IMG/VR virus record: IMGVR_UViG_3300027996_002186
Span: 372,001 to 436,000 of that record
Length of the DNA: 64,000 nucleotides
Strand: one strand, 5' to 3'
Below the pieces are notes generated by a model that had not been told where the DNA came from, searched no databases, and saw only the letters and a program-made list of their open reading frames with translations. The first letter of the stretch is position 1, and every line of letters begins with the position of its first letter. Shown here in pieces: positions 523 to 59,807 of this stretch. Both the position numbers and the translations under genes were made by a program.

Positions 523-566
523 AGCGTAAAAGTATTATTTAATATATATATGAAAAAAGGTCAATT

Positions 567-2066
567 ATGTTGTTAACTATTGAGATAAAAGTAAAAATGA
601 ACAGAGGTAATCTTGGATATTATAATAAAAAAATGAATAGGAAGTTTAAAATTGATGATGAGGTATTAATACCAATAGATAAAATACCAAAGAGTTCGTA
701 TTTTGATGTTGGTGTAATGTGTGATATTTGCTCAATGGAGAAAGAAACAACATATAGAAATTATAATGATTGTTTGAAATATGGATTTTATTCTTGTCAA
801 AAATGCAAACACATCAAAAGGAGAATGACTAATAAGATTAAATATGATGATGAAAATTTCACAAACATAAAGAAGCGAAAAGAAACTATGATATCCAAAC
901 ATGGTTGTTATTTTAACAATAATGAAAAATCCAAAAAAACCGTTAAGGATAAATATGGTGTTTGTAACATTTCACAATTAGATTCAATTAAATGTAAAAA
1001 GAAAGAAACAACATTATTGAATTGGGGAGTTGATAATCCAACTTATATAAAGGATAATAAGTTTATCTATACACAAGATGGTTATATCGAATATAACAAA
1101 GTAGATAAATATCACAAAATTAAATGTGGAGTTGGTCATGAGTTTAATATAACTACAAATTTATTTTATAGTAGATATTATAGAGGATCAACAATATGCA
1201 CTACATGTAATCATATAAACAAACTAACATCCGAGGGTGAGAATGAAGTATATGATCTAATAAATGATAATTATGATGGGAGAATAATTCAATCATATAG
1301 GGATGTTTTGGAGATAGATATTTATCTACCGGATTTGAATATAGGATTTGAATTCAATGGATTATATTGGCACTCAGAAGAACATAAAAATAAAAATTAT
1401 CACCTACACAAAACCGAACATTTCAAGGAAAGGGGTATCAGGATTATACACATATGGGAAGATGATTGGTTGAAAAGGAGAGAAATAATGAAATCAATTA
1501 TTTTAAATAAAGTAAAAAAATCTAATAGAATATTTGCACGAAAATGTAAAGCATGTGAAATTAATAATATAACAGAAGTTAAAGATTTTTTGAATACCAA
1601 CCATATTCAAGGGTTTAATAATAATATCAAAAAATCAATTGGTTTATATTATAATGGTGAATTGGTATCAATAATGTCATTTAATGATATCGAAGGAAGA
1701 AAAAGAATGAAAAATGGGTTTAATATAACTAGATTTTGTAATAAGTTAAACACATCAGTCATAGGAGGAGCTTCAAAAATAATAAGCTTATTTAAATCCA
1801 AGTACAGATATGACTATATGATAAGTTATGCTGATTATTCACTATCAGATGGTGGTCTTTATAAATCAATTGGATTTGAATTGGTTAATAAAAGCTACCC
1901 GGATTATACTTATATAGTTGGTGGAGTTAGAAAACATAAATCAAATTATAAGAAAGATAAATTAGGTATAAAGGGTAAATCAATCACGGAATCAGAGTTC
2001 ATGAAAAATATTGGTATATATAGAATATATGATTGTGGTAAGCTAAAATTTATTATGAATTTTTAA
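567..2066 (+). CDS. Free-standing homing-endonuclease-like protein (Zn-ribbon/KYGV repeats, Vsr/Hef-like nuclease, C-terminal domain)
   Basis: CxxC pairs, KYGVxN-type repeats, EIDIYLP..GFEFNGLYWHSE..IHIWEDDW Vsr-like core, and RFC..GGASK..SYAD..IYDCG tail typical of huge-phage mobile endonucleases. Confidence 0.75.
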   Translation: MLLTIEIKVKMNRGNLGYYNKKMNRKFKIDDEVLIPIDKIPKSSYFDVGVMCDICSMEKETTYRNYNDCLKYGFYSCQKCKHIKRRMTNKIKYDDENFTNIKKRKETMISKHGCYFNNNEKSKKTVKDKYGVCNISQLDSIKCKKKETTLLNWGVDNPTYIKDNKFIYTQDGYIEYNKVDKYHKIKCGVGHEFNITTNLFYSRYYRGSTICTTCNHINKLTSEGENEVYDLINDNYDGRIIQSYRDVLEIDIYLPDLNIGFEFNGLYWHSEEHKNKNYHLHKTEHFKERGIRIIHIWEDDWLKRREIMKSIILNKVKKSNRIFARKCKACEINNITEVKDFLNTNHIQGFNNNIKKSIGLYYNGELVSIMSFNDIEGRKRMKNGFNITRFCNKLNTSVIGGASKIISLFKSKYRYDYMISYADYSLSDGGLYKSIGFELVNKSYPDYTYIVGGVRKHKSNYKKDKLGIKGKSITESEFMKNIGIYRIYDCGKLKFIMNF

Positions 2067-2436
2067 GTATATCCTCGATCTTCTTGTCTCTCTCTAGTAT
2101 TATGAATCTTTGTTCTAGGAATTCTTCTATTTCAACTGGAAGATGAACATTTTGTTTTTTCAAATCATCATAGAATGGCTTACCCATTATATTTATAGAT
2201 GATATTATAATTGCGGTTGTTGAGTCTTGATATCCATCCACTTCCACTTCTTCGCCTAATATAATATATTTAGCTTTGTGTGAATATAATGTAGCACCAC
2301 CGGATGATGCCAATATTCGTCCTGGTGTAGTGGTTGAGTTTGTGTAAATACCAATTCCCCCATAAATACTAGACGTACCTACGAGGTTGATATTAGATGT
2401 ATGTACTTGCTGACTATTTACATTTATGAATCCCAT
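2053..2436 (-). CDS. Hypothetical protein with C-terminal RxxKI tag
   Basis: 127-aa ORF ending ERDKKIEDILKNS. Confidence 0.75.
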   Translation of the reverse strand: MGFINVNSQQVHTSNINLVGTSSIYGGIGIYTNSTTTPGRILASSGGATLYSHKAKYIILGEEVEVDGYQDSTTAIIISSINIMGKPFYDDLKKQNVHLPVEIEEFLEQRFIILERDKKIEDILKNS

Positions 2437-2465
2437 GTAAATTATAACAATTTTAATAAAAAAGT

Positions 2466-4091
2466 TTATTTAACTACTAAGTGTGGTGCTGACCAAATAG
2501 ATTCTGATTTAGCAAAATCAACTATTTTTGTTATATAATCATCTCTTATTTCTTGTGGTAGATTATATAACCAATCTATGAATACTATTGATTGTAGTCT
2601 TGAATTCTCCGCATTTGACTTTTCTCCATCACCAGATAAATCTTGATTGAATATACCGCTGAGGTAATCATTTTCAACCACAAACATCTCACCAACTAAA
2701 TATTCTCTTATTTCAGATTTATCCTTTTTCTTTCTTATAAACTCCTTGATTTGATACAAATTATCTGGCATTAAATGATTTATCATTGATCCAGCTTTAC
2801 CACTAACATACCCACCCTTACTCTTAAGCTCAAGTGATATGTTTGATGTTTGATTACTATCAAATGTTCTACAATCTATACCTGAACCATCTTTCCAATT
2901 ATTAGCAACATCGGCCTCGTTCTCAAATTTCCAGGAAAAGTCTATATTAGCTGTTTTTCTAGAAGGCTTTACCACTTTATCCAGGTTATCAGCTTTTAAC
3001 TTATTATCTATATCTTTATTACCAGAATTAACTATCATTAATTTTGGAGTATTTATCGTTTGCTTAAGTGATACTCCAACTAATCCTTTTCGATGAATAA
3101 CAGACTCACCTAAGAAATCATTAAGATCATCAATATTATCCATATCATAATATGAATTATAATTAGATAAAGATTCATTTCCCTTAAAAACTATCCAGAA
3201 ATCGCTTGGGTTCCATTTAGCCATATTTGAAAGCTCTGGTATATCATAAAAATTATAATCACCTAATAACTCACCAGCCTCGAGTATTATTCCTTTTTTA
3301 TTTTGTATTTCTTCTTTAAATATAAAATGAGCAAATTTATTAATAAGTAGATCTTTACTATTCTTCACTATATAAGAAATATTACTTATATCATCCTCAC
3401 TAAGGTATCCATCTTTAATTCTATTACCGCTTTTATCATATCCCAGTAGAAAATCACATTGATTTTCCATACCTTCCATGATTTTTTTACCTGTTGTAAA
3501 TATATCATATGAGTTATTAATATCATCCATAGATTTATTATTTGATATACTAGCAAATCTTATATCCTTTCTAGTCTCATACCTCATAAGTATTTTACCA
3601 TGATGTGTTTGTATGTTTAACTTAACACCAGCGTTTAACCAAGCTCTAATAGCTAATGTTATTAGAAAGGCAGTTTCTCTAAAATGGTTACCTCTTTTAG
3701 AAGGACCAACACGATCATATTGTCTAACCATATTGGATATTGATCCTCTCTTGGCTACAGCCCAGTCAATGTTAATATCATCAGAATCGGTATGATATAT
3801 CATTAAATCATCATTTGATTCAACTTCTAATTTTAATTTTAAGTCTGAGAAATTTATTTCAGTAACAGTTGAATTTCTTATCCAAATAACCTTTTCATCA
3901 TCACCTGGGATATCCCCCTTTGATAAATCTAATTTTATATCAAAATTATTAATGTTAGATGTTTCTATCTCATTTACTAATTTTTTCATCGCCACTGATT
4001 TCCCCTTTCTAGAAAGGCTATAAGGCATTTTTTTATCACCACTAAGAGTAGCTTCTTTAATAAACCTATTATACCTTAGTATTTTTTTCAT
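2466..4091 (-). CDS. Large hypothetical protein, possible PD-(D/E)xK-like nuclease, N-terminal capsid-targeting-like motif
   Basis: Start moved to ATG 4091 (MKKILRYNRFIKEA), 5 nt after TAATATATA; KWNPSDFW...LVGVSLK motif. Confidence 0.6.
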   Translation of the reverse strand: MKKILRYNRFIKEATLSGDKKMPYSLSRKGKSVAMKKLVNEIETSNINNFDIKLDLSKGDIPGDDEKVIWIRNSTVTEINFSDLKLKLEVESNDDLMIYHTDSDDINIDWAVAKRGSISNMVRQYDRVGPSKRGNHFRETAFLITLAIRAWLNAGVKLNIQTHHGKILMRYETRKDIRFASISNNKSMDDINNSYDIFTTGKKIMEGMENQCDFLLGYDKSGNRIKDGYLSEDDISNISYIVKNSKDLLINKFAHFIFKEEIQNKKGIILEAGELLGDYNFYDIPELSNMAKWNPSDFWIVFKGNESLSNYNSYYDMDNIDDLNDFLGESVIHRKGLVGVSLKQTINTPKLMIVNSGNKDIDNKLKADNLDKVVKPSRKTANIDFSWKFENEADVANNWKDGSGIDCRTFDSNQTSNISLELKSKGGYVSGKAGSMINHLMPDNLYQIKEFIRKKKDKSEIREYLVGEMFVVENDYLSGIFNQDLSGDGEKSNAENSRLQSIVFIDWLYNLPQEIRDDYITKIVDFAKSESIWSAPHLVVK

Positions 4092-4173
4092 AACATTATA
4101 TATTAATATCATGAAATCAGAATCATGTTATCTCACTCATTATTCAAAATGTATATTTCGAATATGTAATAAT

Positions 4174-5199
4174 TTAATTATTGTTATAAACCCTATTATA
4201 CTCTGTTCTATATTTATATGAAATCACTTGTATGGAATATCCTGTATTTGGTTCATATTTCAATTCTTTACCCAAAATATTATAGTACTTTATGGATATT
4301 GGACTTTCAGAATCTTTGTTTATTGATATTATATTAAAGTATTCGAAATCTCCATTATAATCTATTTGTTTTAATCGGTAATAAACTAAGTCTGTGGTTG
4401 TTTTATTATCATAATAATATGATAGTGTTTCACTAGAGTTACCGGCACCAGCAACCTGACCAACAAAATTCCATTGTTCTCCGTTAATAGATGAATAGAT
4501 TTCAAATCTATCATTGTTAGATTCAGATGCAGTTAACCATTTTAACTCATCAAGGCCGTTATTCTCGTTGTATTCACCAGTAAAAGATAATAATTCAATT
4601 GGTAGAGCAATAGAGCAAGTTGTTTCATAAACAAAGATATCATCAAAGTAATATTCTTCGGTATCAGCTTGATTACCTAATAATACTCTAATTTTCAATA
4701 TAGATCCTGTTCCAATATCTATACAATCTATTTGTGAATAACCATTAACAGCCCCACAGACTGCCATAAAGTTTATCCAAACACCGCCATCAATTTGATA
4801 TTCGGCATTTAGTAGGTCCTCACCAGAACCACAACTATTACACTCCATGTTACCCTCAGCTCTCATTGAGATGGATATAGACATAGTAGTATATCCTATT
4901 ATATTAATATCTTCTGATATCCAAATATTATCAGATTCACCTTGGCTATTAACACAACAAGTTAAACCCTCAATATCCTCACAACAAAATTCTTTATCAC
5001 CAAAGGTTGTTCTTGTTCCCCAATAATTATTACCAACTGTACCGGGAGCTCCATCAGCATCACAATTATTAGCAGATGTAGTCCACTTGGTAGTATTTTG
5101 TGTACCGTCTGTATATGATTCGAAATCTTCTGACCAAATAACTGTTTGTGAATTAAGAATAAATGGTAGTAATAAAACTAAAAATGTAAATATCTTCAT
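4174..5199 (-). CDS. Secreted Bacteroidota-type protein (signal peptide, Cys-rich beta domain, LPIEL Ig-like domain, degenerate T9SS-like tail)
   Basis: MKIFTFLVLLLPFILNSQ signal peptide; LPIELLSFTG..LKWLTASESNNDRFEI..GAGNS..YYRLKQIDYNG; tail YYNILGKEL. Confidence 0.8.
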   Translation of the reverse strand: MKIFTFLVLLLPFILNSQTVIWSEDFESYTDGTQNTTKWTTSANNCDADGAPGTVGNNYWGTRTTFGDKEFCCEDIEGLTCCVNSQGESDNIWISEDINIIGYTTMSISISMRAEGNMECNSCGSGEDLLNAEYQIDGGVWINFMAVCGAVNGYSQIDCIDIGTGSILKIRVLLGNQADTEEYYFDDIFVYETTCSIALPIELLSFTGEYNENNGLDELKWLTASESNNDRFEIYSSINGEQWNFVGQVAGAGNSSETLSYYYDNKTTTDLVYYRLKQIDYNGDFEYFNIISINKDSESPISIKYYNILGKELKYEPNTGYSIQVISYKYRTEYNRVYNNN

Positions 5200-5233
5200 A
5201 TAGAATATATATTAAATATACTTAATTGTTTGA

Positions 5234-7078
5234 TTATTTTAATAACTCTGTTTTTCTTAGATCAGAGTTTTTACCAAACCAAATATTAAGAGAGTCTTTT
5301 GAAACATCATCTTTGGTTATAAGTGTTAACCTAGGTCTGTTTATAATATCTTCATACTCATCATCAACTAGAGCTGCTAAACCTTTCTTATACTTAATAT
5401 CATATTTCTTTAAGTCTTTATTCTTCTCCCATTCATTATATTCACTTTGATTATAGAATAGAATTTTCTTTTCTTTCTTAGCTCTTGGTATAGCTACCAC
5501 GATTGGTGTTTCAACCTTATATAACATACGTCTTTCGAACATATCTGGCCAATACTTATAAAAGAAGTTTATCAATAATGCGGCAATTGCATTTCCATCA
5601 ACATCAGCATCAACATATAAAAGAACTCGGCCATACCTAAGTGATTTTAATTCAATATCATGGCCCAATTTCAACCCAATAGAGGCCATTAAGTTAACCG
5701 CCTCTGTATTCTGAACTAATTTCTGACTTGATATATCAGACACGTTTATAAACTTACCTTTCAATGCAAAGGCTCCCATTGATTGAGAATCTCTATACTT
5801 TCTAAAAGCACCAGCAGCAGAATCTCCCTCAAATAACCCTAGTGAATACTTCCATCTATCCTTACCCTTAGCATCAATAAGTTTTTCAACCTTTATCTTA
5901 GATAACTTTTTATTTAGATTTCTTTGTAATTTATTCTCATCTGCATTTTTCTTTTGTTCTATCCAATCTAATATAGAGTTAACTATTTCGGATTTCAATA
6001 TAGATTGAACCATCTTCTTACTAACTTCAAAGGAAGTTCCAAAATCTTTAATCTCAGTAATTAACTTTTCTTTCGTCTGTGATGAGAATGATGGGTTAAT
6101 AACAGTAGAGTCTAAGAATAAGAACATATGGTTCTTTAATTCTGACGGTTTAACATCAGTCTTATGTTTCTTCAAGAAATAGGCTCTAAGATCTAATATA
6201 ATTTGATTCATAATATAATCTACGTGCGTACCACCATCATAAGTTTCTGTTGAGTTAGCAAAACTAACTTGTTGGAATCCATTTTCTGATAAAGCAATAC
6301 CAACAGACCAACTATTACCCTTTTTAGTTTCAAAGAAAAAGTCATCAACATATAATTTTATATAATCTTCATATGATTTGAAATTAATAACTTTACCATT
6401 GAAATAGATTTTAATCTTAGTGTTACATGCGGCTAAATCATAAACTCTTTTTTCCAATAATTGATAGTGTGATTCATCTAAACCATCCATCGTGAATTTC
6501 TCAAAATCTGGATTGAATGATATTTTAGTATGACTCCTGGTAGCCTTTTTAATCTTAGGAGAAGTTCTTTCTCTCATATTGTTAGTAAATGTCTGACTAA
6601 ATTGATTTTTACCATCACAAGTCTCAATAGTGAACTCATTTGAGTATATGTTTGTTAGTGTAGATCCAACACCATTAGTACCAGCCCAAGATCTTTCTTC
6701 ATCATCATTGAAATTAGAACCAGCTTTAAGGTTTGAGAATATCATCTCCGGAATCCACTCTTTATGTTCTTTGTGTTTAACAACTGGTATACCACCATTA
6801 TCCCAAATAGATATTGAATTCTTATCCTTATCTATTGTTACTTTAATTATATTAAGTTTGGATCCTTTTCTTTTACTCTCATCAACTGAATTAGTAATTA
6901 TCTCATCAAATATTTTTAGAAATCCCGGATTGTATGTTATTTCTTTTTGAATTGCCTTCTCTCCTTCGATTAACCATTTGTTAGATGTGTGTGGTTTTAT
7001 AGAACCGATATACATTCCAGGTCTTAGTATAACGTGGTCTATATCATCTAACTTCTTGAATTTCTTATCTATCGACAT
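5234..7078 (-). CDS. DNA topoisomerase II large subunit (T4 gp39+gp60-like; GyrB/ParE-type ATPase + TOPRIM)
   Basis: HVILRPGMYIGS, EIITNSVDE, DNGGIP, GTNGVG, EGDSA, DADVDG, YKKGL. Confidence 0.97.
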   Translation of the reverse strand: MSIDKKFKKLDDIDHVILRPGMYIGSIKPHTSNKWLIEGEKAIQKEITYNPGFLKIFDEIITNSVDESKRKGSKLNIIKVTIDKDKNSISIWDNGGIPVVKHKEHKEWIPEMIFSNLKAGSNFNDDEERSWAGTNGVGSTLTNIYSNEFTIETCDGKNQFSQTFTNNMRERTSPKIKKATRSHTKISFNPDFEKFTMDGLDESHYQLLEKRVYDLAACNTKIKIYFNGKVINFKSYEDYIKLYVDDFFFETKKGNSWSVGIALSENGFQQVSFANSTETYDGGTHVDYIMNQIILDLRAYFLKKHKTDVKPSELKNHMFLFLDSTVINPSFSSQTKEKLITEIKDFGTSFEVSKKMVQSILKSEIVNSILDWIEQKKNADENKLQRNLNKKLSKIKVEKLIDAKGKDRWKYSLGLFEGDSAAGAFRKYRDSQSMGAFALKGKFINVSDISSQKLVQNTEAVNLMASIGLKLGHDIELKSLRYGRVLLYVDADVDGNAIAALLINFFYKYWPDMFERRMLYKVETPIVVAIPRAKKEKKILFYNQSEYNEWEKNKDLKKYDIKYKKGLAALVDDEYEDIINRPRLTLITKDDVSKDSLNIWFGKNSDLRKTELLK

Positions 7079-7166
7079 TTTTAATTTACTTGAATTTAGT
7101 TTATATATAGTAAAATAAAAACTTTGTTTTGGAAGTTTAGTAATTCGAATGATGTATTTTTAGAAA

Positions 7167-7580
7167 TTACTCACCTTTGATGAAGCTTATTTGATACGAA
7201 GCTTTCCTGTATGTGAATTCAAATTTAATAGGATCCGGATTGCTATTATCGAAACAATTATTCACTTTGAATCCTCTTGAATTCATATATCCGGTTATAT
7301 CTTCTATATTAGAATCGACAAGATATTTTTCGTGGAAATCACCATCTTCAGTTTTATTAATATTTATGTATAACTCTGGTGTTTTTCTTGCTTTAGCCAT
7401 TGTCATTGGTGAGAAACTAGCAATTGTTTCATATCCAATATCATCTAGTTCTGATAATTTATCTTCAATGAATTCAAAACAATCATTCATATCAACAATT
7501 ACATCACCATATACATTATAAAGATTTTTAGGAACTTTATTAAATGATTCAAATATTTTATATGTGTTTATGTGTTTCAT
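7167..7580 (-). CDS. Hypothetical protein, CTS-like N-terminus, dispersed paralog family
   Basis: MKHINTYKIFESF; DKLSELDDIGY. Confidence 0.75.
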   Translation of the reverse strand: MKHINTYKIFESFNKVPKNLYNVYGDVIVDMNDCFEFIEDKLSELDDIGYETIASFSPMTMAKARKTPELYININKTEDGDFHEKYLVDSNIEDITGYMNSRGFKVNNCFDNSNPDPIKFEFTYRKASYQISFIKGE

Positions 7581-7590
7581 TCAACATACT

Positions 7591-8256
7591 TTAGATATTC
7601 ATCAATGGAATTTTAGGCTTGATTTCAAATCTTTCATTTAAATACATTTTCAATTCATTCTCGATATAATGTTCTGGAACCTCCATAGATGGATCCATAT
7701 GTTCCATTCTATCTGATAATTCTATTGAGAACTCGTGGAGTACAGTAGGTTTTATAGCTTGTACTAATCTATCAGAAACAACAAAAGCTCTAGTAAATCT
7801 ATCCTTTGGTGATATTTCACCTTCTGCCAATTTCATTGAACTCTTTATAACCTTTTTCAAAAAGGAATTGTAATTGTTACCTGGATCTTCTAAGATTGGT
7901 TTCATAATTTTATTAAATGCTCTAGTTGATCCGAATAAAAACCCTGCGATTGCTATTATTGGGAAGAAAGGAGCTAAAGCCATGGGTGTAATTCTATGCA
8001 CCATTTTAATAACACCAACTTTCATAGCTGATCTTTTCTTGGCTACTTGAGCATCTTTGAATAATGCATTCAACATACCAAATGTGAAAGATGTTCCATT
8101 CTCATTTAAATACTGACCAAGATTACCTCTATGAGCGTGATATAAATGTGTTTTTATATCTTTCTTAGTAACACCTAACCTTTTTAATTCGGCCTTAATG
8201 TTCTTATCATATTTTTCTTGAATTAAAAATTCATCATATTTCTTAATACTCTTCAT
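7591..8256 (-). CDS. Hypothetical protein with hydrophobic segment, CTS-like N-terminus
   Basis: Track start 8400 overlaps the gp52-like gene; the likely start is ATG 8256 (MKSIKKYDEFLIQE). Hydrophobic stretch ALAPFFPIIAIAGFLFG. Confidence 0.7.
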   Translation of the reverse strand: MKSIKKYDEFLIQEKYDKNIKAELKRLGVTKKDIKTHLYHAHRGNLGQYLNENGTSFTFGMLNALFKDAQVAKKRSAMKVGVIKMVHRITPMALAPFFPIIAIAGFLFGSTRAFNKIMKPILEDPGNNYNSFLKKVIKSSMKLAEGEISPKDRFTRAFVVSDRLVQAIKPTVLHEFSIELSDRMEHMDPSMEVPEHYIENELKMYLNERFEIKPKIPLMNI

Positions 8257-8293
8257 ACAAAAACAAAATATACTTTTTACTATATATAAAACT

Positions 8294-9637
8294 ATGATGA
8301 CAGAAAAATCGATCTCAGAATTTTTATCTGATGAATACAAAGAGTTTGCGATGTACTCTATTGAGGGGAGGGCGATGCCTTCCGTCATTGATGGATTCAA
8401 ACCAACTCAACGAAAAGTAATACACATATCTAACCAAATATGGAAAACAGGAGGCGAGAAAACACTAAAAGTCTTTCAATTAGCTGGTAAAGTAGCATCT
8501 GATGCTTTTTATCATCATGGTAATACATCACTTGAGAATTCTATTGTAACGATGGCTCAAAAATTCAAGAACAACGCAGCTTTATTAGAAGAAGATGGTC
8601 AATATGGCTCACTTAGATCTCCTCAACCAGGAGCTCCTAGATACATTGGTACTAAATTAAACGAAAACTTTAGATTAATTTATAAAGATTTTGAACTTCT
8701 AAATTATAAAGAGGAAGAAGGAGAAACAATTGAACCAGAATTCTTTTTACCAATAATACCAACTGTTTTATTAAATGGATCATCAGGTATTGCTGTTGGA
8801 TTTGCATCAAACGTATTAAACAGAAACGTAGAACAACTAATAAACTCTTGTGTTAAGGTGTTAGATGGTAAGAAAATAAAGTCTATAAAACCTTCATACG
8901 CTGAATTTACTGGTGAGTTCATACAAGATGAAGAGAATAATAAGAGATGGATAATAAGAGGTGAATTCGAAAGAGTTAACACATCAACAGTAAGGATAAC
9001 TGAATTACCACCATCAATGACTTATGAGAAATATGAAGATCATTTAGATAAAATATCTGATAATAAAGACATTGTTTCTTATGATGATAATTGTAAAGAT
9101 AATATAGATTATACTATTAAATTCAACAGAAGTGTATTAGCCGATTTGGATGATACAAAACTAAGAAAGTTATTAAAATTAGAAGAATCATCTACTGAGA
9201 TATTCTCCACACTCGATGAGTTTGGTAAATTAAAAATATTTGAAACCTGTGAAGAGATAGTTGAATATTTTGTCAATTTCAGACTTACTTATTATCACAC
9301 CAGAAAAGAATTTCTACTAGAAAAGTTAAATAGAGAATTAAAAATACTTTCTAATAGAGGAAGGTTCATAAAAGCTATACTTGATGAAAAGTTAAAGATA
9401 AATAATGTTGCTAAATCCGAAATAATTTCACAAATTGTGGATATGGGGTTAGAACAAATTGATGATTCATATGATTACCTTTTAAGGATGCCTATATATT
9501 CACTAACAAAAGAATTATTTGAAAAATTAAAAATGGATTTCTCTGCTAAGAAAGAAGAGATTCAAATTTTAGAGAATACCGATCCAAAAGATATGTATCG
9601 ATTGGATTTGAGTGATCTAAAAAAGAAATTCAAATAA
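8294..9637 (+). CDS. DNA topoisomerase II medium subunit (T4 gp52-like; GyrA/ParC-type)
   Basis: RAMPSVIDGFKPTQRK, YHHG, GQYGS, GAPRYI (catalytic Tyr), LLNGSSGIAVGFA, ITELP. Confidence 0.97.
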   Translation: MMTEKSISEFLSDEYKEFAMYSIEGRAMPSVIDGFKPTQRKVIHISNQIWKTGGEKTLKVFQLAGKVASDAFYHHGNTSLENSIVTMAQKFKNNAALLEEDGQYGSLRSPQPGAPRYIGTKLNENFRLIYKDFELLNYKEEEGETIEPEFFLPIIPTVLLNGSSGIAVGFASNVLNRNVEQLINSCVKVLDGKKIKSIKPSYAEFTGEFIQDEENNKRWIIRGEFERVNTSTVRITELPPSMTYEKYEDHLDKISDNKDIVSYDDNCKDNIDYTIKFNRSVLADLDDTKLRKLLKLEESSTEIFSTLDEFGKLKIFETCEEIVEYFVNFRLTYYHTRKEFLLEKLNRELKILSNRGRFIKAILDEKLKINNVAKSEIISQIVDMGLEQIDDSYDYLLRMPIYSLTKELFEKLKMDFSAKKEEIQILENTDPKDMYRLDLSDLKKKFK

Positions 9638-10388: not shown

Positions 10389-10734
10389 TATAGAAATAAA
10401 TATTGAACCATGGGTAATAATTTCACAGGTAGGTGAGTATGAACACCACACACTAATAATGATGTTGACACTCATTGTTGAGTTTAATGGTAATTATTTT
10501 TATATCAAAGATGATGATCAAAAACTCAAAGATGTTTCTAATATGCCAAATTATATAAAGGAAGATTGGTTAAACTACAATAAGAAAGAATTGGGTATAT
10601 CTGTTATTAATAAACAGATAAGGAACCTAGAAATGATTTTAGAGAAAAAAAGTCCTTATGATCCAAAAGATGAAGAATCTCTCACACAACTAATATCAAT
10701 ACGTAGAGATTTAATTATCAACGGTATCATTTAA
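10381..10734 (+). CDS. Hypothetical protein, C-terminal tag variant
   Basis: Overlaps upstream stop; ends IRRDLIINGII. Confidence 0.7.
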   Translation: MDNIEINIEPWVIISQVGEYEHHTLIMMLTLIVEFNGNYFYIKDDDQKLKDVSNMPNYIKEDWLNYNKKELGISVINKQIRNLEMILEKKSPYDPKDEESLTQLISIRRDLIINGII

Positions 10735-11178: not shown

Positions 11179-11215
11179 ATTGTATATATTAATATAATTT
11201 CGTATATTTGTTTAA

Positions 11216-11380
11216 ATGGAAAAAATAAGAACTAAAAGAAAAGGACCCACTGATGGTTATACTCCTATTGGAGAAGCATTATGTCAGGGTAAATGTGATA
11301 CAGAAGCTAGAAGAACTAAATCTGGTATTGTAGTAGTTTGTGATGCTTGTAAAAGAGTTGTTATTGATAATAGAGACTAG
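11216..11380 (+). CDS. Small zinc-ribbon-like protein (54 aa), not in ORF track
   Basis: MEKIRTKRKGPTDGYTPIGEALCQGKCDTEARRTKSGIVVVCDACKRVVIDNRD*; 5 nt after TATATTTG; stop abuts next ATG at 11381. Confidence 0.75.
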   Translation: MEKIRTKRKGPTDGYTPIGEALCQGKCDTEARRTKSGIVVVCDACKRVVIDNRD

Positions 11381-12792: not shown

Positions 12793-12801
12793 TAATATAT
12801 A
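12793..12801 (+). promoter_or_regulatory. Putative late promoter TAATATATA (representative of about 17 copies)
   Basis: 4 nt before ATG 12806. Confidence 0.65.
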
Positions 12802-14844: not shown

Positions 14845-14881
14845 AATAAATTTTTCAAATTTTAATTATATATAAAAAACC

Positions 14882-14912
14882 TTTGTTTTTCTTTCAATTT
14901 TGACTATATTTG
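14882..14912 (+). promoter_or_regulatory. Bacteroidota housekeeping-sigma promoter (-33/-7); probably also drives the RNase P RNA
   Basis: TTTG(14882)-N19-TATATTTG(14905). Confidence 0.8.
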
Positions 14913-19419: not shown

Positions 19420-19451
19420 TTTGGTATTTTAATATAAATTGAGTATATTTG
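19420..19451 (+). promoter_or_regulatory. Bacteroidota -33/-7 promoter
   Basis: TTTG-N20-TATATTTG. Confidence 0.8.
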
Positions 19452-20742: not shown

Positions 20743-20819
20743 AACTTGAAAAGATATTAACTTAAACCTAGATTATTAGAATAATATTTGTATATTTGTA
20801 AAAACAATAAATAGTTAAG

Positions 20820-27742: not shown

Positions 27743-27788
27743 TTTCAAATTAATATTTTTTTAATAATTTTTTACAATATATACTCAT

Positions 27789-31085: not shown

Positions 31086-31217
31086 AGTTACATCTTTCTT
31101 TTCTTCCTCTTCATATCACCCTCTATTATATGAGTCTCATACATATCTATATATTAATTTGGTAGTTTAATAAATAATGTGTATATTGTATTATTAATCA
31201 CTATAAAAGAAATAACT

Positions 31218-32321: not shown

Positions 32322-32353
32322 AAGAGAGTGTTATAATATATAACACTCTCTTT
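32322..32353 (+). terminator. Intrinsic terminator-like hairpin
   Basis: aagagagtgttata-ata-tataacactctctt, 14-bp stem after stop at 32317. Confidence 0.75.
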
Positions 32354-37942: not shown

Positions 37943-37954
37943 TAATATATATTA
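37943..37954. promoter_or_regulatory. Palindromic bidirectional late-type promoter TAATATATATTA
   Basis: Perfect 12-bp palindrome in the 17-bp gap between divergent ATGs at 37940 and 37958. Confidence 0.65.
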
Positions 37955-38913: not shown

Positions 38914-38961
38914 CAAGTTATATATTAAAATAAGTAATAAGGATTTTTAATATATACTTTG

Positions 38962-40378: not shown

Positions 40379-40401
40379 TGTTATTATATATTAAATTAAA
40401 T

Positions 40402-40432
40402 TTTGAAAAACGAATAATAATATGTATATTTG
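40402..40432 (+). promoter_or_regulatory. Bacteroidota -33/-7 promoter
   Basis: TTTG-N19-TATATTTG. Confidence 0.8.
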
Positions 40433-41317: not shown

Positions 41318-41779
41318 ATGTTAAGAGAAGATAATAGTGGTTTTGTGACCTTTCCGATAGAAGGTAAATATTTCAGTAGATCCAATGGTAAAACATTTAT
41401 TTACTTGGTAGCTTTTGATTCAGAAGATTTCCTCAATAAAGGATATGATTTATCTAATATTAACCTTAACCTTAGAGGAAATTTTGTATCGGATGATGTA
41501 TCAATGAGAAGTAAAGATTTTTCAAAATCTTTGATTGATACCGGTAGATATTTCCCAAACACCTTCATTAAAAATGAGAAAGATTTTGTATCTTCAATAC
41601 CACTAACAGCATGTATTTGTGTAGGGTGGGACACATCAACATTTGATTTTAGGGAGGAAGATATTCCTTGGTGTGCTACTTTTAGAGACTTAACAAGCGA
41701 AGGTAGAAGATTATACTATTCAATAAAAAAATTACACAACACAAAAGAAGTTCGAATTTTGACCTTCAATAATATATAA
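41318..41779 (+). CDS. Hypothetical protein
   Basis: 153-aa ORF. Confidence 0.7.
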   Translation: MLREDNSGFVTFPIEGKYFSRSNGKTFIYLVAFDSEDFLNKGYDLSNINLNLRGNFVSDDVSMRSKDFSKSLIDTGRYFPNTFIKNEKDFVSSIPLTACICVGWDTSTFDFREEDIPWCATFRDLTSEGRRLYYSIKKLHNTKEVRILTFNNI

Positions 41780-41815
41780 AATAAGAATTAATTAATTATA
41801 TTTGTAAAAAAAATT

Positions 41816-45455: not shown

Positions 45456-45516
45456 AACTTATATATTAAGAAACTAAATATACATTAGTCATTACTGATA
45501 CATATAGCGAATGAAA

Positions 45517-48114: not shown

Positions 48115-48202
48115 AATTTTATAATATTTTTATATAATCTATATATTAGTTTTCTAAACTATAATTTAATTTAAACATATAAACAAAAAGTATTATATAA
48201 TT

Positions 48203-56289: not shown

Positions 56290-56949
56290 TTATTTTGAAA
56301 GTAATCTAATTAAATCCTCAGTTATTATAGTTATAAGCTTTTTACCTTCAACTGTAACAAGTGGTATATTTTTAACCATTGAATACTTATCATTACCATC
56401 AACATAAACAGATTCTAGTAATTTTTTAAGTTTAGGTTCATTTTTATATTTATCAATATAATAAGATTTTAATTCAGTTACAAATTTACCTAAATCAACA
56501 CCTTCTTTATAGTTATATTTAACCATTTGAAGTTCGTTATCTTGTTTCTCAACCATTATATACCAGATTGATTTCTTAGGTACTTTAACATTTTCAAGGA
56601 AGTTATAAGCTTTAGAAGCTTTAATATTCTTAGGGAATTTAGCAATTTTACCAAAAGTCTCAACCTCTTTATTTTCATTCTCCTCTTCAAACTCATATCC
56701 GAAATCTTCGTTTTCATCATCATTAGATAAATTAATATCTTGATCTTCTGGCATCAGATTCTTTCTAGATGCTGGTTTCTCAATCTTTTTAGAGTCAAGT
56801 GGTAAATTTGGATTCATAGGAATATCAGAATCTTTAAATCCATTAAAGGGTAATGATGGATCTATTTCCTTAATCTTTTTAGATTCGGTTTTAATATCAG
56901 AGAATTTTCTGAAACCTACTATTTTCTTATTGTTTGACTTATCTGACAT
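56290..56949 (-). CDS. Hypothetical late protein
   Basis: TAATATATA upstream; 219 aa. Confidence 0.7.
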   Translation of the reverse strand: MSDKSNNKKIVGFRKFSDIKTESKKIKEIDPSLPFNGFKDSDIPMNPNLPLDSKKIEKPASRKNLMPEDQDINLSNDDENEDFGYEFEEENENKEVETFGKIAKFPKNIKASKAYNFLENVKVPKKSIWYIMVEKQDNELQMVKYNYKEGVDLGKFVTELKSYYIDKYKNEPKLKKLLESVYVDGNDKYSMVKNIPLVTVEGKKLITIITEDLIRLLSK

Positions 56950-56998
56950 TCGTTTAAATTACTTTTGTTTATTATATATTAAAATTTGAAATGGTTTT

Positions 56999-57253
56999 TT
57001 ATCCTTGTTGTTTATAGTAATATTTATCCACCATGTAGTTCTTAAAATTCTTCATAACATTCATATGGTCGAAATTTATAGAAACTAAGGGTTGTAATTT
57101 TTTAAGGAAAGTATTCATGACATCATTCTCATACATATAAGGTGATAATGATTTATCAAGTAAATTATTTTCATAATCAAAATTTGAATCATCATCATCA
57201 TGTCTGTGTTTCATGTAATTAAGTTCACTAAGTTGTTGTCTATCGTATAACAT
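56999..57253 (-). CDS. Small protein coupled to baseplate gene (possible baseplate component)
   Basis: Start overlaps stop of the gp6-like gene. Confidence 0.55.
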   Translation of the reverse strand: MLYDRQQLSELNYMKHRHDDDDSNFDYENNLLDKSLSPYMYENDVMNTFLKKLQPLVSINFDHMNVMKNFKNYMVDKYYYKQQG

Positions 57254-58980
57254 TATATACCCGCTCTATTTTTTGAATCAACAATACCCTTTTTAATAAT
57301 ATTTACTGATTTTAAACCACCACCATCTATATTATCAGAATAATATAGACCGTTTCTATCATACCAACCACCTCTAATAACCGGTATTTCATCTGCTTCA
57401 AATATTATATCATCAAGAACCGGATCTAAACCAATAACTTTATTTGAAATATAATTTGGATCAGCTTTTGGTGTTGATATATCAACATTTATCTTAGAAT
57501 CAAAATTTGATAATTTGTTTTCAACATTTATTTTATTTTCTTTGTGGTAATCCTCATTCTTTTTACACATGAATTGAAGATCAATAGAGTGTACATCATT
57601 TATTGTTGATAGTTCTCTTATTATATCAAGCTTTGGTATTCTATCTATTCTTTTTAAGTCTAAAAAGTATTCTGATATCTTATCTAATATTTGTGCATTA
57701 ACCGAATCGTCAGTTGCATCCGAATAATTCATAACGAATATATTCATTATATAATATGATATTTTTGGTGAATCTACTCTATATTTTCTTGTTAATTGTA
57801 ACTGTCCTCCTGTCCTAAGATATTTATCTATCTTAGATTTCTCATATCTATCAAGCTCAAAAGCTTTTATATCAATTGTGAAATAATCAGCATTTCGATT
57901 CTTAAATAATCTTATATTTGGTGTAGCGACAATAAATATTGTTCCGAATCTCTCATAAGCATTTACATGTGAGAAAACTCCTAACTTCTTAATCTCATAC
58001 GCATATTGTTGTGGTAATCCTAAAACAAAGTTATTACTCGATATTGGTAATATATTTTTTGTAAATAATAGATTTTCAGCATCAGCACCAAAGTTTATAT
58101 CTGTATAAATATCTATGTTGAATACATCAGCGACATCCATGGTTTCACCATTTCCATCTAATACATTTCCAACAAACTCCCAATCATCTCTTGTTCTTCT
58201 AAATATGTTACCAGTCGATCCATCAGATACTAAATAATTTACCTCTATTGAGGAACCAATTGGTGGTTTCAATCCGAACCCACCATTACCAAAAACAATA
58301 TCTACACCACCGTTAAATCCAGTTCTAACAACACAAGCTTGTTCATCAGGCAACATTTCATAAATATGCTTTTTTAATGACCAAAAATCACCATTAACCA
58401 ATATTTCAACGTTGAAGTTCTCGATATCTTTTTGGCTTATTTCTGATAATGATAATGTTTGTAATTGTGTTCCATCACCTGTATAAGTTTTTCTCATCCA
58501 TTTACCTTGTATTATTGGTACGAAGAATTTATAATTAGGAGTTATTTTGTGTGTTACTTTTTCAGTTCCAATACTAAATGAGTAATCAAGAGCGTTTGTT
58601 TTATTCTTAATCAATAATCTATTATTAAATGTCAATCTTGATCCAGGTATTTGATCGGCCACATCAAGATTTGATTTTAAGGTAAACTTCAAAGTACCAG
58701 TAGCACTTATTGATCTACCCGGGATATGTCCAGCAAAAATTGCCGCATTTCTTATAACTTTCCTATTTAAAGCATTTGGGTTACTTAAATCAAATTGGTC
58801 AATTGAATTCTTCAAATATAAGATTGACATTTGGTGTAAATTTTCAATAACAGATAATATCTGACCATATGGAGAAGCAGGACTAAAAAGAAGACCCGCT
58901 TTGTTATGTTCTTTTTTTAAATACCTTTCTATCTCAGCCTTAATACCGGTAAAAGTTATTGATGAAAAATTAGTAGCCAT
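57253..58980 (-). CDS. Baseplate wedge subunit (T4 gp6-like / baseplate J family)
   Basis: ASPYGQILSV, AIFAGHIPGRSISATG, IVFGNGGFG..P, YLVSDGSTGN, FGADAE. Confidence 0.8.
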   Translation of the reverse strand: MATNFSSITFTGIKAEIERYLKKEHNKAGLLFSPASPYGQILSVIENLHQMSILYLKNSIDQFDLSNPNALNRKVIRNAAIFAGHIPGRSISATGTLKFTLKSNLDVADQIPGSRLTFNNRLLIKNKTNALDYSFSIGTEKVTHKITPNYKFFVPIIQGKWMRKTYTGDGTQLQTLSLSEISQKDIENFNVEILVNGDFWSLKKHIYEMLPDEQACVVRTGFNGGVDIVFGNGGFGLKPPIGSSIEVNYLVSDGSTGNIFRRTRDDWEFVGNVLDGNGETMDVADVFNIDIYTDINFGADAENLLFTKNILPISSNNFVLGLPQQYAYEIKKLGVFSHVNAYERFGTIFIVATPNIRLFKNRNADYFTIDIKAFELDRYEKSKIDKYLRTGGQLQLTRKYRVDSPKISYYIMNIFVMNYSDATDDSVNAQILDKISEYFLDLKRIDRIPKLDIIRELSTINDVHSIDLQFMCKKNEDYHKENKINVENKLSNFDSKINVDISTPKADPNYISNKVIGLDPVLDDIIFEADEIPVIRGGWYDRNGLYYSDNIDGGGLKSVNIIKKGIVDSKNRAGI

Positions 58981-59041
58981 TTTAATTTATTAATTTATTT
59001 TAGTTGTAATTTAGTTATCCTTTATCACTCGATTTATTTTA

Positions 59042-59782
59042 TTATAGTAATGATAATAAATCATCTATATTACTATTTAACCAAGTAGTTAATTGTTTAG
59101 CAATAATTGTTTTAGCTTCATCATCATTAACATTTATCCAGTCCCCAACCTTTTTAGTGAATAAACCATGAGTATCACCTAAGTACAACCCATCAGTTCT
59201 GTTTCTACCATAGTCATTAACACCAACATTAGACTTAATTTTTTTAACTAAATCTAATTTATCAATTTTATTAAAATGTTTTATAAGTTTTTCATTGGAT
59301 AATATATCATCTAGTACTGTGTTAAGTTGATTAAGAACATTGATAGATACATCAGCCATATCCCAAGTAATTTGACCATCACTAATTTTATCCATTTCTA
59401 TCTTCATATTACTAACTAAGTCTCGTGACTTATCAATCATTTCTCCTGTTCTATTGAATATAGATAGTTCATTTATATATTCTGAGTTAAATCTATTTTT
59501 TTCAAAAATATCTTTAACATCTTCTATGAATAAACTAATTGAAGAGTTTCTATTCACTAAATCTGAATTCTCATTCAATGGGTTGGTAAAATATTTCCAA
59601 TTGAAATTATCACCTTCTAAATCGGTTTTAGAAACAATTAATTTTAGATTCTTATCACCTTCTAAAATAGACAATTCAATATAGTTTCCTAGTTTTATGT
59701 CACTTTTCTCGAATATAATAACTTCATCGAAGTTATTCGATAACTCAATGTGTATCCTGTTTATATTTTGTTTAAGGTTCAT
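59042..59782 (-). CDS. Hypothetical late protein
   Basis: First gene of the late unit that contains the baseplate gene. Confidence 0.7.
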   Translation of the reverse strand: MNLKQNINRIHIELSNNFDEVIIFEKSDIKLGNYIELSILEGDKNLKLIVSKTDLEGDNFNWKYFTNPLNENSDLVNRNSSISLFIEDVKDIFEKNRFNSEYINELSIFNRTGEMIDKSRDLVSNMKIEMDKISDGQITWDMADVSINVLNQLNTVLDDILSNEKLIKHFNKIDKLDLVKKIKSNVGVNDYGRNRTDGLYLGDTHGLFTKKVGDWINVNDDEAKTIIAKQLTTWLNSNIDDLLSLL

Positions 59783-59798
59783 GTGAAACTTTTTCTTT

Positions 59799-59807
59799 TA
59801 TATATTA
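59799..59807 (-). promoter_or_regulatory. Putative late promoter TAATATATA heading the baseplate operon
   Basis: Upstream of 59782 > 58980 (gp6-like) > 57253. Confidence 0.65.

What the first reader, a model, noticed from the sequence alone, without database searches (positions are those of the whole stretch)
540..59807. Late-type motif TAATATATA sits only 4-6 nt before the start codon, implying leaderless mRNAs
Seen: exact copies on + at 540, 12793, 23222, 28824, 37943 and 38948, and on - at 4097, 5206, 11183, 31148, 37946, 38919, 40385, 45460, 48140, 56973 and 59799. TTTATATATA variants occur near 8281, 23209 and 62754. In 12 of the 17 exact copies the gap to ATG is 4-6 nt, and one copy heads the baseplate operon. 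Established: T4 late promoters are a lone -10 element (TATAAATA) with the start site a few nt downstream. Inference: this is the late-sigma promoter, and many late transcripts begin at or beside the AUG. Leaderless translation would be a way to bypass host initiation control.
Basis: partly seen in the sequence, partly recalled or inferred. Interest (0 to 1): 0.65.

Follow-up and report, generated by a model that had tools for sequence, protein, structure and literature searches.

The report
Phage promoter motif abutting start codons
TAATATATA is very probably the phage's own middle/late promoter in a roughly 490-kb huge phage of a Bacteroidota host, and about half of its copies sit so close to the ATG that the mRNAs should have no leader, which is unusual for this host group but not yet shown by RNA data.

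Summary

**Genome-wide pattern**
- 82 of 97 copies are intergenic.
- The motif is strand-specific.
- Motif-to-ATG gaps are bimodal: 3-6 nt (50), 7-13 nt (3), 14-35 nt (50).
- It marks operon heads: 68% of genes at divergent junctions against 6% of tightly packed genes. So it is a promoter, not a translation signal.
- It is a lone -10-like element with no -35.

**Sigma factor.** The window's record is only part of the genome. The fuller record of the same phage (483 kb) encodes a gp55-family sigma. There the motif core precedes the capsid, portal, protease, terminase and sheath genes.

**Not strictly late.** The motif also precedes nrdA/B, topoisomerase II and uvsX.

**Second promoter class.** Host-type Bacteroidota promoters (TATATTTG) show the same 4-5 nt geometry. 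Their start-site distance is known experimentally, which puts +1 on the A of ATG.

The leaderless inference is well supported by sequence but has no RNA evidence. "Bypassing host initiation control" is unsupported, because no gene in this genome has a Shine-Dalgarno sequence.

Verdict: a new variant of known kinds (T4 late promoter; the leaderless Thermus phage strategy).

The parts
540..548 (+). TAATATATA, leadered class (gap 18) before the homing endonuclease gene 567-2066
4097..4105 (-). TAATATATA, short-gap class (gap 5) before the ATG at 4091 (541-aa ORF 2466-4091, MKKILRYNRF...)
5206..5214 (-). TAATATATA, short-gap class (gap 6) before 4174-5199 (341 aa, signal peptide)
8280..8288 (+). 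variant CTATATATA, gap 5, before the topoisomerase II subunit gene 8294-9637. It overlaps the palindromic partner TTATATATA (8281-8289, -), which lies 25 nt before the uncalled gene 7591-8256(-)
11183..11191 (-). TAATATATA, short-gap class (gap 4) before 10711-11178 (MKYIKLFEDF...)
11203..11210 (+). host-type -7 box TATATTTG, gap 5, before 11216-11380. It is divergent from the previous part
12793..12801 (+). TAATATATA, short-gap class (gap 4) before 12806-13210
14867..14875 (-). variant TTATATATA, gap 22, before 14011-14844. A host-type TATATTTG at 14905-14912(+) lies 6 nt before the divergent gene 14919-15419
19444..19451 (+). host-type TATATTTG, gap 19, before 19471-20742
20791..20798 (+). 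host-type TATATTTG, gap 21, before 20820-22304 (DUF2201 metallopeptidase/VWA). It is conserved in LR745206.1
23222..23230 (+). TAATATATA, short-gap class (gap 5), heading four paralogous genes 23236-26524 (MEWIKRFEEL.../MKYLKRFNEEL...). No family hit; not shown to be baseplate
27775..27783 (+). variant CAATATATA, gap 5, before 27789-28526. The variant and the gap are conserved in LR745206.1
28824..28832 (+). TAATATATA, short-gap class (gap 4) before 28837-29205. The orthologue in LR745206.1 keeps the motif with gap 5 while the flanks differ
31148..31156 (-). TAATATATA with no long ORF nearby (62 nt to 30711-31085). Orphan or long-leader copy
32334..32342 (+). TAATATATA in the loop of a terminator-like hairpin after 31700-32317, 25 nt before the 58-aa ORF 32368-32544
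37943..37954 (.). overlapping copies on both strands (37943-37951 +, 37946-37954 -) in the 17-nt space between the divergent ATGs of 37958-38302(+) and 37308-37940(-). Identical in LR745206.1
38919..38927 (-). TAATATATA, short-gap class (gap 5) before 38305-38913
38948..38956 (+). TAATATATA, short-gap class (gap 5) before 38962-39648. The orthologue in LR745206.1 has gap 4
40385..40393 (-). TAATATATA, short-gap class (gap 6) before 39650-40378
40425..40432 (+). host-type TATATTTG, gap 15, before 40448-41314
41770..41778 (+). TAATATATA overlapping the end of 41318-41779, 37 nt before 41816-43099. A host-type TATATTTG (41797-41804, gap 11) lies between them
45460..45468 (-). TAATATATA, short-gap class (gap 4) before 44577-45455. 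The motif and gap are kept in LR745206.1 although the flanks diverged (58% aa identity)
48140..48148 (-). TAATATATA, leadered class (gap 25) before 47050-48114
56973..56981 (-). TAATATATA, leadered class (gap 23) before 56290-56949
59799..59807 (-). TAATATATA, leadered class (gap 16), heading 59042-59782, 57253-58980 (baseplate wedge, phrog_219) and 56999-57253
62754..62762 (-). variant TTATATATA, gap 4, before 61940-62749 (homing-endonuclease-like)

Best explanation
TAATATATA (extended form wwT-TAATATATA, with a strict core ATATATA ending in A) is the -10-type element of the phage-specific promoter class. The phage is a Mahaphage-clade huge phage (at least 483 kb) that infects a Bacteroidota host. 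Proposed sequence of events: (1) Host RNA polymerase with host sigma-A first reads about 40 host-type promoters (TTG..N~19..TATATTTG) in front of auxiliary and enzyme genes. (2) A phage-encoded sigma then redirects the host core enzyme to roughly 190 TAATATATA promoters. Most likely this is the 121-aa gp55-family protein, which like T4 gp55 needs only a lone -10-like element. These promoters drive replication and nucleotide-metabolism genes and all virion genes. (3) Transcription starts about 5 nt after the last A of the motif, so the motif spans -13 to -5. (4) In half of the promoters that nucleotide is the A of the ATG (gap 4; gaps 5-6 give 0-2 nt of leader), so the mRNA is leaderless. It would presumably be translated by direct binding of the ribosome with initiator tRNA to the 5' AUG. 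In the other half a 10-30 nt A-rich, Shine-Dalgarno-free leader of the normal Bacteroidota kind follows. Leaders of 2-9 nt are avoided because they suit neither route. Shown: the motif statistics, its position, its orientation, its conservation, the presence of the sigma genes and the gene content. Inferred: which sigma reads the motif, the exact start site, and leaderless translation itself.
For: Enrichment and strictness: 19 copies against 6.9 in the window. 97 against 44 for the reversed word in the 312-kb record. It is the top-ranked of all 126 nine-mers of the same composition, both in count and in each gap peak. Only a few one-base variants keep the peaks.

Location and orientation: 82 of 97 copies lie in the 7.8% of the record that is intergenic. 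32 copies have gap 3-6 in the sense orientation against 2 for the reverse complement.

Promoter rather than translation signal: a motif lies within 35 nt of 68% of genes at divergent junctions but only 6% of co-directional genes packed within 15 nt. Terminator hairpins lie directly upstream of several copies.

Bimodal spacing: 50 short, 3 intermediate, 50 long. The other 179 kb of the genome gives 40, 6 and 43.

Start site: in the leadered class the 5th nt after the motif is A in 80% of cases, the same position as the A of ATG at gap 4. Host-type TATATTTG promoters in the same genome have gaps of 4-5 nt in 8 + 8 cases. In Flavobacterium the G of that box is at -5, with 4-5 nt to the mapped start site (PMC6847099, PMC9723704).

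Start codons are bounded: the in-frame stop lies a median 15 nt upstream, and 47 of 53 short-gap genes have no alternative upstream start.

Conservation: in LR745206.1 the motif persists at orthologous genes while the flanks diverge and the gap drifts between 4 and 5. It is also enriched there, 191 against 75.

No -35 element; only A/T tracts near -18 and -30 as for host RNA polymerase (PMC6847099).

Sigma: a gp55-family protein is present in the fuller record of the same phage. hhalign to T4 gp55 gives 94.5% probability, and T4 gp55 (7d7c_F) is the only significant PDB hit. No phage RNA polymerase was found.

Late genes carrying the motif core: capsid, portal, protease, terminase and sheath; tail fibre and baseplate wedge.

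Relatives with gp55 homologues (Lak-A1, XacN1, pT24) use the T4-like ATAAATA instead.
Against: The start site is therefore inferred from geometry only. The motif differs from the T4 consensus TATAAATA. No gp45 clamp was found, and gp33 was not searched for, so a T4-like activation mechanism is not shown. Two ECF-type sigmas are also encoded. One of them has a conserved TAATATATA-like box upstream of its own gene, as autoregulated ECF sigmas do, so it could be the reader of the motif. The motif also precedes genes that are early or middle in T4 (nrdAB, topoisomerase II, uvsX), so 'late' may be too narrow. Gene starts come from my own simple ATG-only ORF caller, which missed at least one gene. 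The comparisons with other phages rest on 40-kb samples.
Confidence: 0.7

Rival explanations
1. The same promoter and geometry, but the motif is read by the phage ECF-type sigma (202 aa, G000 218578-219186, regions 2 and 4) and not by the gp55-like protein. This sigma would be made early from a host-type promoter and would then amplify itself from its own TAATATATA promoter.
For: It is a clear ECF sigma: Sigma70_r2 60 bits and r4_2 41 bits, and SigW-like with E 9e-19. In this phage a TATATTTG box and a TAATATATA box both lie upstream of its gene. A TAATATATA-like box is conserved upstream of its orthologues in six related contigs. Autoregulation is the rule for ECF sigmas (established knowledge).
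Against: ECF sigmas use a -35 element (AAC) together with a -10 element. No -35 word is found upstream of the roughly 100 promoters. A lone element at -13 to -5 is the known hallmark of gp55. Distant phages with gp55 homologues have the related ATAAATA at the same place. The box upstream of the ECF gene may simply make it one more gene of this promoter class.
Confidence: 0.2
2. The motif is not a promoter but an AU-rich translation-initiation or mRNA-processing signal on longer transcripts that start further upstream.
For: The host group lacks Shine-Dalgarno sequences and relies on A/U-rich, unstructured initiation regions (PMC6847099). The motif lies next to start codons. There are no RNA data.
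Against: It is nearly absent from operon-internal genes (6%) and common at divergent junctions (68%). Spacing is bimodal with an empty valley, not one fixed distance. Half the copies are 16-35 nt from the ATG. The known host promoter box shows the same two spacings. At 37943/37946 two divergent ATGs are only 17 nt apart.
Confidence: 0.05
3. The regular spacing is an artefact of gene duplication: one promoter-plus-N-terminus cassette copied many times, rather than selection on each promoter.
For: Many downstream proteins begin with a similar peptide (MKHLKKFNE...). T4 internal-protein genes are known to share conserved 5' cassettes.
Against: All-against-all BLASTP finds no large paralogue family among the short-gap genes. 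Only about 18 of the 44 tagged proteins have the motif directly upstream, and many short-gap genes lack the tag. The flanks and the 4-6 nt gap sequences differ between copies. Orthologues keep the motif while the flanks diverge.
Confidence: 0.05

Closest known systems
T4-type late promoters read by gp55 (TATAAATA at about -13 to -6, no -35 element; established knowledge, structure 7d7c)
   Same: A lone AT-rich -10-like element starting TA at about -13, with no -35. A gp55-family sigma is encoded by the phage. The element precedes capsid, portal, sheath, terminase, baseplate and fibre genes. It occurs in a T4-related jumbo-phage group that has a gp23-type capsid protein (PMC7824862).
   Different: The word is TAATATATA, and ATAAATA shows no positional signal here. 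No gp45 clamp was detected. The motif also precedes nrdAB, topoisomerase II and uvsX. Half of the copies abut the ATG, whereas T4 late mRNAs have Shine-Dalgarno leaders.
Thermus phages phiYS40 and Lalka27a (mostly leaderless transcripts; bioRxiv 10.64898/2026.04.20.719267, citing Sevostyanova et al. 2007). From memory, P23-45 is similar.
   Same: [quoted passage not shown] The host polymerase is re-targeted by phage factors for late genes.
   Different: There the host phylum itself uses -10-adjacent leaderless genes widely (PMC12340547). In the Bacteroidota studied, few mRNAs are leaderless or nearly so: 3.7% of 5' UTRs under 10 nt, 5.5% leaderless, and 13% with leaders of 10 nt or less (PMC7366714, PMC9723704, PMC6847099). 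Here only about half of the promoters are of this kind, and the main structural genes are leadered. Nothing has been mapped experimentally.
Bacteroidota sigma-A promoters (-33 TTTG / -7 TAnnTTTG)
   Same: The same distance from the end of the box to the start site (G at -5). The same A/T tracts near -18 and -28. The same Shine-Dalgarno-free A-rich leaders of about 15-25 nt. A true set of such promoters exists in this phage.
   Different: The TAATATATA word does not fit TAnnTTTG. It lacks the invariant TTTG, so another sigma is needed.
Jumbo phages with mapped transcriptomes (phiKZ, AR9)
   Same: Huge genomes with distinct early and late promoter classes made of short AT-rich words.
   Different: Those phages bring their own multisubunit RNA polymerases and show no leaderless transcripts (phiKZ early phase, PMC8244752) or UTRs of 26-491 nt (AR9, PMC5312081). 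No phage polymerase is found here.

Membership tests
T4-type (gp55-dependent) late promoter | Lone -10-like AT-rich element ending about 5-6 nt before the start site, with no -35 element | tested here: met
   The position weight matrices show only wwT-TAATATATA. There is no enriched word at -40 to -8 apart from A/T tracts. The inferred +1 is 5 nt after the motif.
T4-type (gp55-dependent) late promoter | Phage encodes a gp55-family sigma | tested here: met
   Absent from the window and from the 312-kb record. Present in the 483-kb record of the same phage (100% identical over 20.6 kb). Scores: phrog_234 E 3.6e-7; hhalign to T4 gp55 94.5%; PDB 7d7c_F E 7.7e-6.
T4-type (gp55-dependent) late promoter | Consensus TATAAATA | tested here: not met
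   The core here is ATATATA. ATAAATA has a flat gap distribution in this genome, whereas it is the upstream-enriched word in Lak-A1, XacN1 and pT24.
T4-type (gp55-dependent) late promoter | Activation through gp33 and the gp45 sliding clamp | tested here: inconclusive
   phrog_223 (gp45) has no match in this phage. There is only a weak match (E 1.8e-4) in LR745206.1. gp33 was not searched for.
T4-type (gp55-dependent) late promoter | Drives virion (late) genes | tested here: met
   Capsid, portal, protease, terminase and sheath; tail fibre and baseplate wedge operon. It also drives nrdA/B, topoisomerase II and uvsX.
Leaderless mRNA | Transcript 5' end at, or within 1-2 nt of, the A of the AUG | not testable with these tools
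Leaderless mRNA | Promoter -10 element a few nt upstream of an AUG start with no room for a ribosome-binding leader | tested here: met
   50 + 40 genes have gap 3-6. Two divergent ATGs lie 17 nt apart at window 37940/37958. Start codons are bounded by in-frame stops. The calibrated host-type box has the same gap (PMC6847099).
Bacteroidota sigma-A promoter | TAnnTTTG at -12 to -5, with or without TTTG near -33 | tested here: not met
   TAATATATA lacks the TTTG. A separate set of true TATATTTG promoters exists: 22 in the window against 10.9 expected.
ECF sigma promoter | -35 AAC-type element about 16-17 nt upstream of a -10 element | tested here: not met
   No such word is found upstream of the 96 promoters examined. 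AAACTTTT is not over-represented overall (68 against 96 for the reversed word) and shows no fixed spacing.

The most novel reading that the evidence does not exclude
A sub-clade of the largest known phages (this phage, LR745206.1, LR756504.1) has rewritten the T4-type late promoter to TAATATATA. It has moved roughly half of its transcription units, under both host-type and phage-type promoters, to leaderless mRNAs, in a host phylum where such mRNAs are rare. Together with the phage-encoded ribosomal protein bS21, this could be a phage-specific translation regime that favours phage messages on remodelled ribosomes.
Probability: 0.25. Interest if true: 0.8.

Novelty: new variant of a known kind. 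Interest (0 to 1): 0.55.

Why it matters
**Annotation.** Huge Mahaphage-clade phages are uncultured, and most of their genes have no recognisable function. A sharply defined promoter word, plus a second host-type class, gives a sequence-only way to do three things in these 0.5-0.7 Mb genomes:
- cut the genomes into transcription units;
- fix start codons;
- separate early (host sigma) genes from phage-sigma genes.

**Biology.** If the leaderless inference holds, it would be the first case of large-scale leaderless expression in a phage of Bacteroidota. Hosts in that phylum already initiate translation without Shine-Dalgarno pairing and rarely use leaderless mRNAs. That would make testable the question of how ribosomes choose between phage and host messages there.

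**Evolution.** The change from ATAAATA to ATATATA among phages carrying gp55 homologues offers a natural series for studying how a minimal sigma and its promoter co-evolve.

Tried and rejected
- **RNA evidence.** I did not try another route.
- **A -35 element.** I looked for one with position matrices and k-mer enrichment and found only A/T tracts.
- **A third promoter class.** I tested AAACTTTT-N-TATA for the ECF sigma. The word is not over-represented and has no fixed spacing. It remains a weak lead.
- **The paralogue-cassette explanation.** Rejected by BLAST clustering.
- **An early wrong conclusion.** I first concluded that no gp55 exists. That was wrong for the phage as a whole: the 312-kb record lacks about 179 kb that the 483-kb record of the same phage holds, and gp55 lies in that missing part.
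- **Phage RNA polymerases.** The multisubunit type is absent. The T7-type search had a silent control, so it is not informative.
- **Large ORFs behind the motif.** PHROG and Pfam scans of 20 of them mostly gave nothing. Those genes remain unassigned.
- **gp55-like protein against the PDB.** A single-sequence search found nothing. Only the profile search did.
- **The phiYS40 paper** (PMC1885378) is not held. Facts about phiYS40 rest on a later preprint's statement, and those about P23-45 on my memory.
- **Genetic code.** For Lak-A1 my scripts treated TAG as sense, following the published use of code 15 for Lak phages (PMC7824862). Lak was left out of the protein alignment because of stops under table 11.

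Full report
**1. What the window is**

The window is the minus strand of positions 56099-120098 of a 312,709-bp IMG/VR virus record. The record has 29.4% G+C, uses the standard code and is 92% coding by a simple ATG-ORF caller.

That record is incomplete. A 483,262-bp IMG/VR record (G001, CheckV 98%) is 100% identical to it over 20.6 kb. G001 holds 179 kb that the smaller record lacks.

The only DNA relative among deposited phages is LR745206.1, at 634,780 bp. Protein hits tie the phage to the other genomes of more than 460 kb from Al-Shayeb et al. and to the Prevotella Lak phages. This is the 'Mahaphage' clade, predicted to infect Bacteroidetes (PMC7162821). It falls in the T4-related jumbo group defined by gp23-type capsids and T4-like sigma factors (PMC7824862).

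The sequence agrees with a Bacteroidota host:
- No gene has a Shine-Dalgarno sequence. G falls to 5-9% and A rises to 50-66% in the 20 nt before start codons.
- Host-type promoters of the Bacteroidota kind are present (section 4).

**2. The observation**

That is 19 against 6.9 +/- 2.7 expected, and no shuffle reaches 19. Twelve copies lie 4-6 nt before the ATG of an ORF of 114-541 aa. The three named variants exist.

In the 312-kb record there are 97 copies against 44 for the reversed word. Further statistics:
- Among all 126 nine-mers made of five A and four T, this word is the most frequent (97 against a mean of 43).
- It is by far the most often found 3-6 nt (32 against a mean of 1.2) or 16-28 nt (31 against a mean of 1.7) before a gene start. 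Its reverse complement scores 2 and 9.
- 82 of the 97 copies lie in the 7.8% of the record that is intergenic.

**3. It is a promoter**

The motif-to-ATG gap is bimodal. Counting the few tolerated variants ([TAC][AT]ATATATA), 50 genes have gap 3-6 (26 at 4, 12 at 5, 11 at 6), 3 have gap 7-13 and 50 have gap 14-35. The 179 kb found only in G001 gives 40, 6 and 43.

A translation signal would have one preferred distance and would occur at operon-internal genes. Instead a motif (this one or the host-type box) lies within 35 nt of:
- 68% of genes at divergent junctions, which must have their own promoters;
- only 6% of co-directional genes packed within 15 nt.

Terminator-like hairpins lie directly upstream of several copies. 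The word is strict: only TTATATATA, AAATATATA, CAATATATA and TAATAAATA retain the two peaks. Upstream there is a T at -1 and W at -2 to -4, but no -35-like word. There are only A/T tracts about 15-20 nt upstream of the motif and directly before it. These correspond to the AT-rich tracts at -28 and -18 described for Flavobacterium promoters (PMC6847099).

Conservation supports function. LR745206.1 has 191 copies against 75 for the control. At orthologous genes the motif persists while the flanks diverge, and the gap drifts between 4 and 5 (window 28824, 38948, 45460).

**4. A second, host-type promoter class calibrates the geometry**

K-mer enrichment upstream of genes revealed ATATTTGT. This is the Bacteroidota sigma-A box TAnnTTTG, usually with a TTG about 19 nt upstream. 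About 35 copies lie upstream of genes in the 312-kb record, and the window has 22 against 10.9 expected.

The genes behind it are recognisable enzymes: NAD-dependent ligase, Glu/Gln-tRNA synthetase, peptidases, an HD hydrolase and CoaE.

This box has the same two spacings. Eight genes have gap 4-6 and the others have gap 11-31. Eight more short ones lie in the G001-only part.

For this box the start site is known experimentally. In F. johnsoniae the invariant G is at -5, with 4 or 5 nt between box and start (PMC6847099). In F. psychrophilum the box spans -12 to -5 (PMC9723704). So a 4-nt gap puts +1 on the A of the ATG.

TAATATATA shows the same modal gap. In its leadered copies the 5th nt after the motif is A in 80% of cases, and the host-type box gives 72% at the same position. 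I therefore place the motif at -13 to -5.

**5. Leaderless inference**

About half of the phage-type promoters and a third of the host-type promoters have the ATG at +1 to +3.

The start codons are well bounded. The in-frame stop lies a median 15 nt upstream (in 21 of 53 cases only 6 nt). Only 6 of 53 genes have any alternative in-frame start upstream. Protein alignments with the relative begin at residue 1-5. At window 37940/37958 two divergent ATGs are 17 nt apart, with overlapping motifs on both strands.

The empty valley at gaps 7-13 fits the known poor translation of very short leaders. That point is established knowledge, not tested here.

For comparison:
- Short or absent leaders are a minority in the Bacteroidota studied: 3.7% of 5' UTRs under 10 nt, 5.5% leaderless, and 13% with leaders of 10 nt or less (PMC7366714, PMC9723704, PMC6847099).
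- phiKZ shows none in its early phase (PMC8244752).
- AR9 has UTRs of 26-491 nt (PMC5312081).
- Thermus phages YS40 and Lalka27a are mostly leaderless (bioRxiv 10.64898/2026.04.20.719267).

No RNA data could be obtained, so this remains an inference.

**6. Which polymerase and sigma**

No multisubunit or T7-like RNA polymerase was found, so the host core enzyme must be used. Three phage sigmas exist:
- Two are ECF-type, with regions 2 and 4.
- One is a 121-aa gp55-family protein at G001 126163-126528.

Evidence that the third belongs to the gp55 family:
- BLASTP to T4 gp55: 26% identity, E 2e-4.
- A profile of its homologues: 94.5% hhalign probability against T4 gp55.
- T4 gp55 (7d7c_F) is its only significant hit in the PDB.

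Homologues are annotated as late sigma factors in XacN1 and Xoo-sp13.

A lone element from -13 with no -35 is what gp55 reads in T4, so I assign the motif to this protein (about 60%). The ECF sigma at 218578-219186 is the main rival. Its gene has a conserved TAATATATA-like box upstream in six relatives. No gp45 clamp was detected.

**7. Is it 'late'?**

Yes, but not only late. In G001 the motif core precedes:
- the gp23-like capsid gene (gap 31, conserved in two relatives);
- portal (gap 27), head protease (27), large terminase (19) and tail sheath (27);
- a virion protein (gap 4).

In the smaller record it precedes a tail-fibre gene (gap 4) and the baseplate-wedge operon of the window (gap 16).

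It also precedes nrdB, nrdA, both topoisomerase II subunits, uvsX, a Lon-like protease and homing endonucleases. It is best called the phage-sigma (middle plus late) class.

The abundant structural genes use the leadered form. The short-gap form is mostly on small genes of unknown function.

**8. Comparative series** (40-kb samples around the gp55 homologue)

| Phage(s) | Upstream word | Gaps |
|---|---|---|
| XacN1, Lak-A1, pT24 | T4-like ATAAATA | mostly 16-35 nt (none short in Lak-A1, 2 each in XacN1 and pT24) |
| LR756501, LR756500 | ATATATA | almost all long |
| This phage, LR745206.1, LR756504.1 | ATATATA | both short and long |

The word change and the leaderless habit therefore look derived within the clade. 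This needs whole-genome counts to confirm.

**9. Verdict**

The 'bypass of host initiation control' idea has no support. The finding is a new variant of known kinds.

Noticed in passing
window 11203, 14905, 18626, 19444, 20791, 31642, 40425, 41797 (+) and about 35 sites in the 312-kb record: There is a second promoter class of the Bacteroidota sigma-A type (TTG..N~19..TATATTTG). It precedes enzyme and auxiliary genes and presumably marks the early genes. It shows the same short (4-6 nt) and long (11-31 nt) gaps to the ATG.
   Followed up: yes
whole record, e.g. window 10711-11178(-), 12806-13210(+), 23236-26524(+), 38305-38913(-), 7591-8256(-): 44 of 404 predicted proteins begin M-[KREN]-[YHWFK]-[LIVM]-[KRN]-x-[FYI], typically MKHLKKFNE... 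(shuffled control 0.33). The tag occurs with or without the promoter motif. It resembles the N-termini of the T4 internal head proteins, MKTYQEFIAE and MKTFKEFTST. From memory, that T4 peptide is the capsid-targeting sequence. A head maturation protease is present. These proteins may be packaged into the capsid.
   Followed up: partly
G000 293136-293294(+), 156403-156510(-), 122290-122481(+); the same in G001, with similar ones in G002 and LR745206.1: Three small ORFs (about 60-78 aa), far apart, each match a different consecutive segment of the gp23 major capsid profile (positions 159-194, 197-259, 302-354). They end in similar ...K-I-x-N-I-F tails. The full-length capsid gene lies elsewhere (G001 137993-139723). 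Such capsid-fragment mini-genes also occur in the relatives. Their function is unknown; they might be decoys or regulators.
   Followed up: partly
G000 as a whole: The IMG/VR record holding the window (312.7 kb, rated 91% complete) is only about two thirds of the genome. G001 (483,262 bp) is identical where they overlap and adds 179 kb, including the capsid, portal, sheath, terminase and gp55-like genes. G000 positions 1-8836 extend beyond the end of G001.
   Followed up: yes
G000 219187-219320 (upstream of the ECF sigma gene) and loci L027-L032: The roughly 90-nt leader of the ECF sigma gene carries a conserved block AAACTTTT + TAATATATA-like. In the relatives it also has two copies of (T)AACGGCAA(T). 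This may be an operator or an RNA element for autoregulation.
   Followed up: partly
window 32310-32365: One motif copy sits in the loop of a hairpin (GAGAGTGT ... ACACTCTC followed by T's) just after gene 31700-32317. It looks like a terminator with a promoter word in its loop.
   Followed up: no
G000 253978-254172(-) = G001 237936-238088(+): The phage encodes ribosomal protein bS21 (PF01165, E 3e-12), and so do two relatives. No IF1 or IF3 was found. The phage also encodes a Glu/Gln-tRNA synthetase, a tRNA nucleotidyltransferase (window 26540-27742), and apparent DnaK- and DnaJ-like proteins (judged from their N-terminal sequences only).
   Followed up: partly
window 567-2066, 5234-7078, 8294-9637, 61940-62749: Topoisomerase II is split into two genes, T4-style, on opposite strands. 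Several homing-endonuclease genes lie nearby (HNH and GIY-YIG-like), some of them behind the promoter motif.
   Followed up: no
window 7591-8256(-): The apparent 713-nt gap next to the topoisomerase gene is a real gene (MKSIKKYDEF...) that my ATG-only greedy caller missed. Gene counts in this report are therefore slight underestimates.
   Followed up: yes
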